A DNA stretch of 63,147 nucleotides, the filler included, from Octopus bimaculoides (lineage: Eukaryota): the NCBI RefSeq assembly GCF_001194135.2. It is 6 parts of 6 records of this genome, joined end to end, with 100 filler letters (N's around TTAATTAATTAA, not from the genome) between each part and the next. Parts side by side here need not be neighbours in the genome. Positions count along the whole stretch, not along the records: positions 10,760 to 24,087 come from NC_068984.1; 5 more parts are not named here. One strand, 5' to 3'. The notes under the pieces were generated by a model. That model saw nothing but the letters and a program-made list of their open reading frames with translations, had not been told where the DNA came from and searched no databases. Below, in pieces: positions 11,128 through 12,589 of this stretch (position 1 is its first letter; each line of letters opens with the position of its first letter). The position numbers were made by a program, and so were the translations under genes.

Positions 11128-11336
11128 CCGGAGAGCTGGCAGAATCGTTACCGCGCCGGACAAAATGCTTAGCAACATTTCTTTTGACTTTACGTTCAAA
11201 TGCTGCCGTGGTCGATTTTGATTTTCATCCTCTCGGGGTCGATAAAATAAGTACCAGTTAAACACTGGGGTCAATTATTTACATTATTTACATTATTTAC
11301 ATTTGACGGATATTTGTACTCATCTTGTTTGATGTT

Positions 11337-11382
11337 AACACAGCGTTTCGGATGATATACCGTCCAGTCTTCTTCAGGTGTC
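11337..11382 (-). ncRNA. Minimal type-I hammerhead ribozyme motif (degenerate; GCU at the cleavage triplet)
   Basis: Minus strand gacac-CTGAAGA-a-gactggacggtatatcatcc-GAAAC-GCT-gtgtt. Confidence 0.5.
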
Positions 11383-11655
11383 TTGGGGAAATTTCATTCC
11401 TAAGGTATTTTTCGATGTTATTATTATTATTATTATTGAGTGAGAGAGCAGTGCATGCCATCAAAGTGACACTAGGGTAAAATATACGAAGCCCATTATA
11501 CCCATCATGACTACCCGTCTGATTATTATTATTATTATTATTTATTATTATTATCATCATTATCATTATTATTATTATTTTTTTATGTTTGACTTTTGCT
11601 TTGCATTTGTACAAGTTGGATCCAAGTCTCACCCAGAGACCTCAAGTGACAACAA

Positions 11656-11721
<66 letters not shown>

Positions 11722-11743
11722 TTTATTATCATCATCATCATCA

Positions 11744-11807
<64 letters not shown>

Positions 11808-11882
11808 CAGGTCACTGCCTGGAATCGAACTCGGAATCTTGGGGCTAGTAGCCCGCGCTCTTAACCACTACGCCATATGCCC
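11808..11882 (-). promoter_or_regulatory. tRNA-derived Pol III internal promoter (SINE head; not a functional tRNA)
   Basis: A-box-like TGGCGTAGTGG (11865-11875) and B-box-like GAGTTCGATTCC (11821-11832). The acceptor stem cannot form. Confidence 0.75.
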
Positions 11883-11930
11883 GTGGGCATATGGCGTAGT
11901 GGTCTTAACCCAGGTTCAAAATTTCTCCAA

Positions 11931-11978
11931 GACACCTGATGAAGGGTGGAGGAGGTATAACATCCGAAACGTTGTGTC
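11931..11978 (+). ncRNA. Minimal type-I hammerhead ribozyme motif
   Basis: Stem I gacac/gtgtc; core CTGATGA (11936-11942) plus extra A; stem II gggtg/catcc; GAAAC-GTT with palindromic AACGTT in place of stem III. Confidence 0.7.
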
Positions 11979-12589
11979 AACAACAGACAAGATGAGGACA
12001 AATGTCCGTCGAATGTAAAAGAATGTAAATAATGTAAATAATGTAAATAATTCCTCCTCTCTTAAATATAGAACTATGTTAACTGGGGTCGATGTAATCG
12101 ACTTACCCCCTCTCCCAAACTTGATGGCCCTGTGCCATATTTGAAACCATATTCTCAATGGATGGATGAAGGAACCGGTAATTCATTTTTCACCTGTCAC
12201 TATTTCTACGCAGTCTTAGCATTTTATATTAATGCAAATATATTTTGTAGGCCAGAAATACCTGGGAGAGTTGAATGGCAGAGAAGCACCCCCCACTCCA
12301 CCTCATGCTAATGCTTTAGGCTCTTAACTCCTTCTTAAGAAAGCTGGGTCCTGATCCCCACTGCTTCCACATAATGTGCCACTGTTTGCATTGCATTTTG
12401 AATCCTGTGAGGTGGTCACTGCGATCACGCAGAGCTAAGGAATCTTTGGGGTTGTAACCAGTTCGGTCCAAGACACCAGTTGATCATTATGCTAAACGAT
12501 GCCTTCCGAAGATCACTTTCATTCCTTGTTGACTAACTTTTCTTACCTGCTTCAGCCATTACCTCTTTTTCTCAGAAACTGAGAGCCGC

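What the first reader, a model, noticed from the sequence alone, without database searches (positions are those of the whole stretch)
11273..12081. tRNA-headed SINE carrying a Penelope-type hammerhead ribozyme, integrated as a head-to-head palindromic dimer with a 9-bp TSD
Seen: the unit is a tRNA-like head with A/B boxes, an (AAT)n linker, aacccaggtt..aaattt, a minimal type-I HHR, and an (AATGTAAAT)n tail. Two units diverge from a perfect 19-bp palindrome (accactacgccatatgccc-gt-gggcatatggcgtagtggt); the right unit has lost most of its head. The whole block is bracketed by ACTGGGGTC, which duplicates a site in the SINE it interrupts, so it appears to have inserted in one event. Established: PLEs carry minimal HHRs with palindromic stem III in their pseudo-LTRs and often integrate with inverted terminal copies; SINE 3' ends usually derive from their partner retroelement; an extra nucleotide after A9 is tolerated in natural HHRs such as CChMVd. 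Inference: this is a Pol III-transcribed, self-cleaving non-autonomous element mobilised by Penelope RT/GIY-YIG, a SINE-retrozyme hybrid. I am not aware of a description of it but cannot run a search.
Basis: partly seen in the sequence, partly recalled or inferred. Interest (0 to 1): 0.9.

Follow-up and report, generated by a model that had tools for sequence, protein, structure and literature searches.

The report
Penelope-type hammerhead insert with tRNA head
An 809-bp insert inside an octopus-type SINE has the layout typical of Penelope-like retroelement insertions (two inverted arms with a minimal hammerhead motif, a central palindrome, a 9-bp target duplication) and also carries a tRNA-like promoter head, but one locus cannot show that this combination is a propagating SINE family.

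Summary
The block 11273-12081 lies between two copies of ACTGGGGTC (11264-11272 and 12082-12090). A second copy of the host SINE family carries that site only once.

The block holds two inverted arms, each made of a body, a hammerhead (HHR) motif and an (AATGTAAAT)n tail. They meet head-to-head at a perfect 19+2+19 palindrome formed from the first 19 nt of a tRNA-like head with A and B boxes.

The right-arm motif (11931-11978) meets every published hallmark of the Penelope-like-element (PLE) minimal HHR. The left-arm copy is degenerate.

- a 29-bp extension at one end only (12053-12081);
- two unique segments, each bounded by (AAT)n tracts, between the head and the left HHR;
- a TTTT run in the sense strand upstream of the left HHR.

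Inverted arms, a junction palindrome, a 9-bp TSD and a roughly 30-bp extension at one end match the published PLE insertion layout. PLE-type mobilisation is therefore well supported by analogy.

The claim of a tRNA-headed SINE family could not be tested. No other copy could be retrieved, and a one-off chimera made by template switching explains the locus at least as well. Self-cleavage is untested. The closest precedent is the schistosome Sm-alpha/Sj-alpha group of tRNA-derived SINE-like elements with hammerheads.

The parts
11135..11272 (+). 5' part of the host tRNA-derived SINE that was interrupted
   Evidence: Aligns with a second copy of the same family at 20520-20700 (reverse complement).
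11264..11272 (.). Left copy of the 9-bp target-site duplication ACTGGGGTC
   Evidence: The site is single in the second host-family copy.
11273..11303 (-). Tail of the long (left) arm: (AATGTAAAT)3 + AATT, abutting the TSD directly
   Evidence: 31/31 complementary to 12022-12052 (I2).
11337..11382 (-). Degenerate hammerhead copy in the long arm: GACAC CUGAAGA A GACUG..CAUCC GAA ACGC U GUGUU
   Evidence: Helix II keeps 3 of 5 pairs, helix III is no longer palindromic, and the descriptor does not match it.
11395..11420 (-). 5' edge of the arm homology (CCTTAGGAATGAAATTTCC) plus AACATCGAAAAATA
   Evidence: Alignment A2 and global alignment.
11421..11806 (-). Interior of the long arm: three (AAT)n-type tracts (11421-11437, 11521-11582, 11660-11806) separating two unique segments, U2 (11438-11520) and U1 (11583-11659). 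The sense strand has TTTT at the complement of 11478-11481.
   Evidence: Neither segment has a copy elsewhere in the piece.
11810..11882 (-). tRNA-like head, 73 nt: A box 11875-11865, B box 11831-11821. Its first base corresponds to tRNA position +1.
   Evidence: Not recognised by ARAGORN or the Rfam tRNA model.
11864..11903 (.). Head-to-head junction palindrome: 19 nt + GT + 19 nt
   Evidence: I6: 100% complementary.
11885..11903 (+). Head positions 1-19 in the opposite orientation, joined directly to the short arm
11904..11930 (+). 5' part of the short (right) arm: CTTAACCCAGGTTCAAAATTTCTCCAA
11931..11978 (+). Intact minimal type-I hammerhead motif. Helix I is GACAC/GUGUC. CUGAUGA is at 11936-11942, the extra A at 11943, helix II GGGUG/CAUCC at 11944-48/11961-65, GAA at 11966-68, the palindromic ACGU at 11969-72 and U17 at 11973. 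The predicted cut lies between 11973 and 11974.
   Evidence: Descriptor match is unique, with 0 of 1000 shuffles. The helix I + II structure scores -12.5 against an MFE of -13.1 kcal/mol. Coordinates.
12011..12052 (+). Tail of the short arm: 9-mer repeats (AATGTAAAN)n + AATT
   Evidence: (D3, I2).
12053..12081 (+). 29-nt extension at one end only, between the tail and the TSD
   Evidence: Not significantly similar to the host flank or to any part of the block. Its size and position fit the PLE 'tail' extension (PMC3846280, PMC8557442).
12082..12090 (.). Right copy of the TSD ACTGGGGTC
12091..12160 (+). 3' part of the interrupted host SINE

Best explanation
The block is the product of a single retrotransposition event of the Penelope-like-element (PLE) type, and it is a composite rather than a clean SINE dimer.

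Proposed steps (all inferred):
1. Staggered nicks 9 bp apart at ACTGGGGTC in a resident SINE gave two 3'-OH primers.
2. Each primed reverse transcription on an RNA ending in a PLE-type 3' module: about 25 nt of body, a minimal hammerhead, about 35 nt, then an (AAUGUAAAU)n tail.
3. The two RNAs already differed when they were copied.
4. The top-strand cDNA (long arm, 11273-11882) ran through its module. It then continued through AAT-rich junctions into further templates and finally along a Pol III tRNA-derived SINE RNA to that RNA's 5' end (tRNA +1).
5. It added 2 nt, snapped back on itself for 19 nt, and was joined to the other cDNA.
6. That other cDNA (short arm, 11904-12081) is 5'-truncated and starts 29 nt beyond the tail repeats.
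7. Repair left the 9-bp TSD.

The hammerhead is part of the 3' module that PLE machinery copies. At this locus one copy is intact and one was already decayed. Because they are inverted, they cannot form the sense-sense dimer that this ribozyme type needs on one transcript, so they are probably inert here.

Shown: the anatomy, the TSD, the motif statistics and the match to published PLE insert architecture. Inferred: the enzyme, the order of events, the template switching, and that the head-HHR link is a one-off rather than a family trait.
For: Architecture:
- Inverted arms, junction palindrome and TSD.
- A 29-nt extension at one end only.
- PMC3846280 describes the typical Penelope insert as an adjacent inverted pLTR, a 9-bp TSD, a 31-bp optional 'tail' on one inverted pLTR, palindromes at the inverted junction attributed to self-priming, unrelated sequences captured between solo pLTRs inside TSDs, and template jumps at (AAT)n.
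- PMC8557442 describes an inverted 5'-truncated copy and a 30-40-bp extension at one end.

Hammerhead:
- It is unique in the piece and absent from 1000 shuffles.
- The same descriptor hits exactly once in 41 kb of unrelated invertebrate DNA, 134 nt downstream of a GIY-YIG ORF.
- PMC4209133 also reports dual min-HHRs 100-700 bp apart on opposite strands.

Two templates and a junction made at insertion:
- The arms differ by about 14-20% in unique sequence, yet the palindrome (19/19) and TSD (9/9) are perfect. At 14% divergence, 0.86^28 is about 0.015.

Composite nature:
- Every junction between unrelated unique segments in the long arm is an AAT-type tract.
- The sense strand has TTTT before the left HHR.
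Against: - No PLE RT/GIY-YIG ORF and no octopus PLE 3' end could be compared, so the partner is inferred from architecture and motif type only.
- A tail made of short tandem repeats is also typical of CR1/L2-type LINE partners.
- The long arm begins exactly at tRNA +1 and has an intact A/B-box promoter. That is also what a true SINE family member would look like.
- A randomly sampled locus is a priori more likely to belong to a multi-copy family than to be a unique chimera.
- The (ATT)n tracts (up to about 150 nt) lie in a gap-rich scaffold (runs of N), so the interior of the long arm could be partly mis-assembled.
Confidence: 0.42

Rival explanations
1. The long arm is a full-length member of a propagating family of Pol III-transcribed, tRNA-derived SINEs whose 3' module (min-HHR plus 9-mer repeat tail) comes from a PLE partner. 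The locus is a full-length copy plus an inverted second copy, made in one PLE-mediated event. U1, U2 and the long microsatellites are later additions or part of the family body.
For: - Intact A and B boxes at 44-nt spacing; such a pair arose in only 1 of 1000 shuffles.
- The arm starts at tRNA +1, which is also the centre of the palindrome.
- In the right unit, head nt 1-19 are contiguous with the HHR module in unique sequence.
- Precedent exists in the Sm-alpha/Sj-alpha tRNA-derived SINE-like elements with hammerheads (PMC2770079, PMC6765202) and in short non-autonomous Penelope derivatives (PMC6685494; bioRxiv 10.64898/2026.07.22.740005).
- Octopus genomes hold hundreds of unclassified SINE families and active PLEs (PMC13282606).
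Against: - Only one locus is available, and there is no second copy in the 13.3 kb.
- The long arm is 610 nt with two unrelated unique segments and a sense-strand TTTT upstream of the HHR, which is not a compact Pol III unit.
- tRNA models do not recognise the head.
- Self-cleavage would separate the promoter from the tail.
- The left HHR was probably already degenerate when copied, which argues against constraint on it.
Confidence: 0.35
2. Nested independent events. An inverted pair of truncated PLE 3' ends inserted first and created the TSD. A separate tRNA-SINE and other AT-rich sequences later landed in or expanded at its centre, and a DNA-level fold-back or deletion produced the 19-nt palindrome.
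For: - The region is densely packed with nested SINEs.
- PLE-type elements and microsatellites are associated with each other (PMC8557442; L002).
- Long palindromes are prone to rearrangement (general knowledge).
Against: - The palindrome consists exactly of the first 19 nt of the head and is centred on its 5' end. A later SINE insertion would give direct repeats, not inverted ones.
- No internal TSDs are discernible.
- This reading needs several coincident events.
Confidence: 0.13
3. A LINE, not a PLE, mobilised the arms. The module is the 3' end of a stringent-type LINE (CR1/L2-like, with a short-repeat tail), the inversion arose by twin priming, and the hammerhead-like motif is fortuitous or a passenger.
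For: - Tails made of short tandem repeats are typical of CR1/L2-type LINEs and their SINEs (general knowledge).
- LINE sequences are present in the piece.
- A 9-bp TSD is compatible with LINE-type target-primed reverse transcription.
Against: - Twin priming gives non-overlapping inverted segments, whereas both arms here carry the same module and a tail.
- The motif matches the PLE-specific min-HHR hallmarks, with 0 of 1000 shuffles.
- The junction palindrome and the extension at one end are PLE hallmarks (PMC3846280).
- No (AATGTAAAT)n tail occurs elsewhere in the piece.
Confidence: 0.07
4. Assembly artefact. The inverted structure, or the link between the head and the left arm, results from mis-joining reads across (ATT)n tracts or an inverted repeat.
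For: - The piece has many N gaps.
- The (ATT)n tracts reach about 150 nt.
Against: - The arms differ by 14-20% and have different lengths, so they are not a collapsed or chimeric duplicate.
- The palindrome, the right unit and both TSD junctions lie in unique sequence.
Confidence: 0.03

Closest known systems
Minimal type-I hammerheads of Penelope-like elements (Cervera & de la Pena 2014, PMC4209133)
   Same: - CUGAUGA and GAAA boxes with H17 = U.
- A 5-bp helix I.
- An unpaired nucleotide between A9 and G10.1, and the G10.1-C11.1 pair.
- No helix III loop, with a palindromic ACGU that can only form a helix between two molecules.
- Occurrence as two motifs a few hundred bp apart on opposite strands.
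   Different: - Not seen here inside a pLTR next to an RT/GIY-YIG ORF.
- Helix II has 5 bp with a 12-nt loop, rather than the 7-8 bp reported for schistosome families.
- Activity is untested.
Canonical EN+ Penelope insertion architecture (Arkhipova et al. 2013, PMC3846280; Craig et al. 2021, PMC8557442)
   Same: - An inverted 5'-truncated copy placed head-to-head.
- A palindrome at the inverted junction.
- A 9-bp TSD.
- An extension of about 30 bp at one end only.
- Unrelated sequence carried between the terminal modules.
- AAT-type repeats at the junctions.
   Different: - No coding region.
- The arms are only about 150 nt long.
- The captured sequence includes a tRNA-like Pol III promoter that forms the 5' end.
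Sm-alpha / Sj-alpha SINE-like retroposons of schistosomes (Ferbeyre 1998 and Laha 2000, as summarised in PMC2770079 and PMC6765202)
   Same: A tRNA-derived Pol III head combined with a type-I hammerhead in a short non-coding retroposon.
   Different: - Sm-alpha carries a canonical hammerhead recognised by the Rfam model, and a head that tRNAscan calls tRNA-Gln-like. Here neither model matches.
- Sm-alpha occurs largely in tandem arrays.
- This locus is an inverted pair in a cephalopod-type genome.
Metazoan non-LTR retrozymes (PMC7229834; bioRxiv 10.64898/2026.07.22.740005)
   Same: Short, non-coding, hammerhead-bearing elements thought to depend on PLE enzymes.
   Different: - Retrozymes are head-to-tail tandem repeats of about 170-400 bp with canonical type-I hammerheads, and they yield circular RNAs.
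- Here there is no tandem arrangement, the hammerhead is of the minimal type, and a Pol III head is present.

Membership tests
PLE-type minimal hammerhead (min-HHR) | Catalytic boxes CUGANGA ... GAAA, with H17 before the helix I 3' strand | tested here: met
   Right arm: CUGAUGA 11936-42, GAA-A 11966-69, U17 11973. The left arm keeps the boxes (CUGAAGA, GAAA), but 16.1 is C.
PLE-type minimal hammerhead (min-HHR) | Helix I of 4-5 bp and helix II of at least 4 bp closed by G10.1-C11.1 | tested here: met
   GACAC/GUGUC and GGGUG/CAUCC. The structure scores -12.5 against an MFE of -13.1 kcal/mol. The left arm keeps only 3 of 5 helix II pairs.
PLE-type minimal hammerhead (min-HHR) | [quoted passage not shown] | tested here: met
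   A at 11943. The equivalent A is also present in the left arm. The criterion is from PMC4209133.
PLE-type minimal hammerhead (min-HHR) | No helix III loop, with palindromic 15.1-16.1 so that helix III forms only in a dimer | tested here: met
   ACGU at 11969-72. The left arm has ACGC and does not meet this.
PLE-type minimal hammerhead (min-HHR) | Located in the terminal repeat of an element encoding RT and GIY-YIG endonuclease, or homologous to such a repeat | not testable with these tools
   No such ORF lies next to the block, and no octopus PLE sequence could be reached.
PLE-type minimal hammerhead (min-HHR) | Self-cleavage as a dimer | not testable with these tools
   Needs an in vitro assay. 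The literature reports low activity for this class (PMC4209133).
Rfam hammerhead families (Hammerhead_1, _3, _II, HH9, HH10) | Match to a covariance model | tested here: not met
   No hammerhead hit at E <= 10 in a 901-nt search. This is expected for a motif without helix III.
tRNA-derived SINE | Internal Pol III promoter: A and B boxes at tRNA-like spacing | tested here: met
   A box with 0 mismatches, B box with 1 mismatch, 44 nt apart. It is the only such pair in the piece, and 1 of 1000 shuffles gave one.
tRNA-derived SINE | Head recognisable as tRNA-derived by tRNA models | tested here: not met
   ARAGORN finds nothing even at relaxed thresholds, and Rfam tRNA gives no hit at E <= 10 in 111 nt. 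By eye the head aligns with tRNA numbering (U8, A14, G18-G19, TTCGA), but the stems are degenerate.
tRNA-derived SINE | Many dispersed copies sharing the same head-body-tail order | not testable with these tools
   There is no second copy in the 13.3 kb. The collections hold no octopus non-genic sequence.
tRNA-derived SINE | Transcribable by Pol III through to the tail (no T4 run inside) | tested here: not met
   The long arm has TTTT at sense position 402-405, upstream of its HHR. The short arm has none but lacks the B box.
tRNA-derived SINE | Flanked by a target-site duplication | tested here: met
   A 9-bp ACTGGGGTC that is single in a second host-family copy.
PLE-type insertion architecture | Adjacent inverted 5'-truncated copy, head-to-head, with a palindrome at the junction | tested here: met
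   Criteria from PMC3846280 and PMC8557442.
PLE-type insertion architecture | Short TSD (8-10 bp in the A. vaga examples) and an optional 30-40-bp extension at one end only | tested here: met
   A 9-bp TSD and a 29-nt extension at the right end only.
Non-LTR retrozyme | Head-to-tail tandem repeats, each with a canonical type-I hammerhead | tested here: not met
   The arms are inverted, no tandem unit is present, and the hammerhead is of the minimal type.
Sm-alpha/Sj-alpha-like SINE | tRNA-like head plus a canonical hammerhead detectable with the Rfam model | tested here: not met
   No Rfam tRNA or hammerhead match. The resemblance is in design only.

The most novel reading that the evidence does not exclude
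Octopus genomes harbour a true family of Pol III-transcribed, tRNA-derived SINEs that parasitise Penelope-like elements through a 3' module containing a minimal hammerhead. That would be a SINE-PLE partnership with a defined promoter head, outside flatworms. This locus would be a full-length member integrated in the characteristic PLE inverted fashion.
Probability: 0.35. Interest if true: 0.65.

Novelty: new variant of a known kind. Interest (0 to 1): 0.45.

Why it matters
How PLEs recognise and copy their templates is poorly understood, and so is the role of their minimal hammerheads. If a tRNA head plus a PLE 3' module of about 150 nt is enough for mobilisation, it defines a minimal cis-acting substrate for PLE reverse transcriptase and endonuclease. 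It would also give a natural Pol III-driven reporter for testing that substrate.

If the locus is instead a one-off chimera, it is still useful. It is a clean, TSD-bounded example of PLE-type template switching that captured a SINE RNA up to its 5' end, which is the kind of event by which new SINEs are thought to arise. Either way it adds cephalopods to the taxa with dispersed PLE-type hammerheads.

Tried and rejected
- Rfam scans of the piece, of the block and of the head gave no hammerhead or tRNA match. The many miRNA 'hits' are TA/CA microsatellite hairpins.
- ARAGORN found nothing at default or relaxed thresholds.
- Other copies through proteins: the antisense ORF of the right unit and an ORF of an abundant octopus-type SINE each found no candidate.
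- The LINE ORF found only relatives at 69% identity or less. The two contigs fetched share nothing else with the window.
- Exact look-ups of eleven window ORFs found none in the collection.
- Other copies through DNA patterns (HHR module and head): nothing in the metagenome, viral or prokaryotic-genome collections.
- Tested whether the 29-nt extension is a longer degenerate TSD or a copy of some part of the block. Its similarity was not above shuffles.
- No other (AATGTAAAT)n tail in the piece.
- The literature searches found no description of a tRNA-headed, PLE-dependent SINE in cephalopods. Ferbeyre 1998, Lunse 2017 and Pyatkov 2004 were not held.
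Full report
**Setting.** The usable piece (10760-24087) is AT-rich, gap-containing animal DNA packed with nested tRNA-derived SINEs, microsatellites and a LINE fragment. From my own recollection, several of these repeats look like abundant Octopus SINE families. That attribution is not a tool result. 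The collections available here hold no non-genic sequence from this organism, as the searches described below show.

**Checking the observation.** The block 11273-12081 is bounded by two exact copies of ACTGGGGTC, at 11264-11272 and 12082-12090. The flanks are the two halves of a resident SINE. A second copy of that SINE family (20520-20700, reverse complement) reads straight through the site with one copy of the 9-mer. The 9-mer is therefore a target-site duplication, and everything between the copies arrived after the host SINE.

Inside the block, two arms are inverted relative to each other: 11274-11394 (-) and 11919-12042 (+), 124 nt at 86% identity (I1-I3). With indels the homology extends to about 11413 and 11904. 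Each arm ends outward in (AATGTAAAT)n + AATT, and 31/31 of these terminal bases are identical (I2).

At the centre lies a perfect 19 + 2 + 19 palindrome, 11864-11882 / GT / 11885-11903 (I6). Its arms are the first 19 nt of a 73-nt head on the minus strand (11882 down to 11810). The head has an A box matching TRGCNNAGTGG exactly and a B box one mismatch from GGTTCGANNCC, 44 nt apart. This is the only such pair in the piece, and 1 of 1000 dinucleotide shuffles produced one. ARAGORN, even at relaxed thresholds, and the Rfam tRNA model do not recognise the head. 'tRNA-derived' therefore rests on the promoter boxes and on my by-eye alignment to tRNA numbering, in which the first base is position +1.

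**The hammerhead.** No Rfam hammerhead model matches, even at E <= 10 in 901 nt. That is expected for a motif lacking helix III. I therefore wrote a descriptor following Cervera & de la Pena (PMC4209133):
- helix I of at least 4 bp, then CUGANGA;
- an optional extra nucleotide;
- helix II of at least 4 bp closed by G10.1-C11.1, then GAA;
- a self-complementary A...U helix III;
- H17, then the helix I partner strand.

It matches once in both strands of the piece, at 11932-11977, and in none of 1000 dinucleotide shuffles. As a positive control, the same descriptor hits exactly once in 41 kb of unrelated invertebrate contigs. That hit lies 134 nt downstream of an ORF with a weak GIY-YIG Pfam match, and it has the same extra A and a 4-nt palindromic helix III.

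The window motif reads GACAC-CUGAUGA-A-GGGUG(12-nt loop)CAUCC-GAA-ACGU-U|GUGUC. It shows all four features that PMC4209133 lists as emerging beyond their descriptor: the nucleotide between 9 and 10.1, G10.1-C11.1, palindromic 15.2-16.2, and a short helix I. The helix I + II structure is within 0.6 kcal/mol of the MFE of the 52-nt segment. On a longer segment, competing folds are more stable.

The left-arm copy has CUGAAGA, only 3 of 5 helix II pairs, and ACGC in place of ACGU. By these criteria it is dead.

- Between the right tail and the TSD there are 29 extra nt (12053-12081). The left tail abuts the TSD directly. This stretch is not significantly similar to the host flank or to anything in the block.
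- The 'linker' of the long arm is about 390 nt. It consists of three AAT-type tracts separating two unique segments, 11438-11520 and 11583-11659. Neither segment has a relative in the piece.
- The sense strand of the long arm contains TTTT upstream of its hammerhead. That is a Pol III terminator.
- The arms differ by 14-20% in unique sequence, yet the palindrome (19/19) and the TSD (9/9) are perfect. If the arms had been identical at insertion, the chance of no change in those 28 positions is about 0.86^28, or 0.015. The arms were therefore most likely copied from two already different templates. The palindrome was created at insertion, and the left hammerhead was probably already degenerate in its source.

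**Comparison with known insertion architectures.** Arkhipova et al. (PMC3846280) describe the typical endonuclease-containing Penelope insert as follows:
- direct pLTRs plus an adjacent inverted pLTR;
- a 9-bp TSD in their example (8 and 10 bp in others);
- a characteristic 31-bp 'tail' optionally present on one inverted pLTR;
- abundant palindromes at the inverted, mostly head-to-head, junction, attributed to self-priming;
- unrelated sequences captured between solo pLTRs and bounded by TSDs;
- template jumps involving (AAT)n.

Craig et al. (PMC8557442) restate two of these, the inverted 5'-truncated copy and a 30-40-bp extension at one end. PMC4209133 reports pairs of min-HHRs 100-700 bp apart on opposite strands. 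The block matches these points one for one. This is the strongest argument that PLE-type machinery made it. It remains an argument from architecture, because no RT/GIY-YIG ORF lies beside the block and no octopus PLE terminus could be obtained.

**Mechanism I consider most likely (steps inferred).**
1. Nicks 9 bp apart were made at ACTGGGGTC.
2. Both 3' ends primed cDNA synthesis on RNAs ending in the module.
3. The long-arm cDNA continued, through AAT-rich junctions, onto further templates. It finally ran along a Pol III SINE RNA to its 5' end, added two bases and snapped back for 19 nt.
4. It was then joined to the short, 5'-truncated cDNA, whose synthesis had started 29 nt beyond the tail repeats.
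5. Repair duplicated the 9 bp.

In this reading the right unit never had a full head. The head-HHR linkage may be a by-product of template switching rather than a heritable design.

The alternative is a true SINE family with a tRNA head and a PLE-derived tail. It remains nearly as likely. In its favour, the long arm begins exactly at tRNA +1, its promoter boxes are intact, and a randomly sampled locus is a priori more likely to belong to a family. Against it, the non-compact interior and the internal TTTT do not fit a clean copy of a Pol III master gene.

Self-cleavage would also cut the promoter head away from the tail. This ribozyme class is weakly active and needs two sense copies (PMC4209133), which an inverted DNA dimer does not put on one transcript. 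I therefore regard the hammerhead here as part of the copied 3' module rather than as a working processing signal.

**Attempts to obtain other copies all failed.**
- Protein searches with ORFs read across the right unit and across an abundant octopus-type SINE found no candidates.
- The LINE ORF found only relatives at 69% identity or less, from another organism.
- No window ORF is in the collection.
- DNA pattern scans of the metagenome, viral and prokaryotic-genome collections found nothing.

The family question therefore cannot be settled here.

**Relation to what is known.**
- tRNA-derived, Pol III-type SINE-like elements carrying hammerheads have been known in schistosomes since 1998. These are Sm-alpha and Sj-alpha, summarised in PMC2770079 and PMC6765202. 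They carry canonical hammerheads that the Rfam model finds, and heads that tRNAscan calls, and they occur largely in tandem.
- Dispersed min-HHRs are attributed to truncated PLEs (PMC4209133, PMC7761336).
- Short non-autonomous Penelope derivatives have been reported (PMC6685494).
- Non-LTR retrozymes are proposed to be non-autonomous PLE derivatives (PMC7229834; bioRxiv 10.64898/2026.07.22.740005).

I found no description of a tRNA-headed element with a PLE minimal hammerhead in cephalopods. The library is incomplete, though, and Repbase and Dfam could not be consulted.

**Verdict.** SINE-family status and self-cleavage are unproven. I rate it a new variant of a known kind, of moderate interest.

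Noticed in passing
L002 14193-14231 (+), with the ORF at 13457-14059: A minimal hammerhead (AUGA-CUGAAGA-A-GAUCC..GGAUC-GAA-AAUU-U|UCAU) lies 134 nt downstream of an ORF with a weak GIY-YIG match, in an unrelated ENA contig. An (ATT)n tract follows about 65 nt later. It is a textbook PLE 3' end and served as a positive control for the descriptor.
   Followed up: partly
window 12467-12483: TCCAAGACACCAGTTGA resembles the 5' half of the hammerhead module (15 of 17 bases). The local score was 24 against shuffles of 16.3 +/- 2.4, reached by 6 of 500 shuffles. It may be an old relic of a related module just outside the host SINE.
   Followed up: partly
window 16248-17324 (+): A 358-aa ORF with a weak zf-RVT match, the C-terminal part of a LINE ORF2. 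Its end runs into a microsatellite. The best relatives are 69% identical and come from contigs of another organism.
   Followed up: partly
window 17650-20310 and 23519-24087: Dozens of sub-threshold Rfam miRNA matches (mir-297, mir-466, mir-3149, mir-1277 and others) fall on TA/CA-rich microsatellites. They are simple-repeat hairpins, not miRNA genes.
   Followed up: yes
window 11478-11481 (complement): TTTT in the sense strand of the long arm, inside unique segment U2 and upstream of the left hammerhead. It would terminate a Pol III transcript that started at the head.
   Followed up: yes
window 10940-11134, 13930-14060, 14196-14270, 20520-20700: Fragments of at least three other SINE families lie nested in or abutting microsatellites, with N gaps next to them (for example 14127-14191). 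The second copy of the host SINE family ends in (ATT)n at about 20445-20505. The gaps suggest a scaffolded assembly, so the lengths of long (ATT)n tracts should be treated with caution.
   Followed up: partly
window 11273-12090: The arms differ by 14-20% in unique sequence, while the palindrome, the TSD and the terminal 31 nt of the tails are identical. This implies two distinct templates at insertion and a fairly young insertion.
   Followed up: yes
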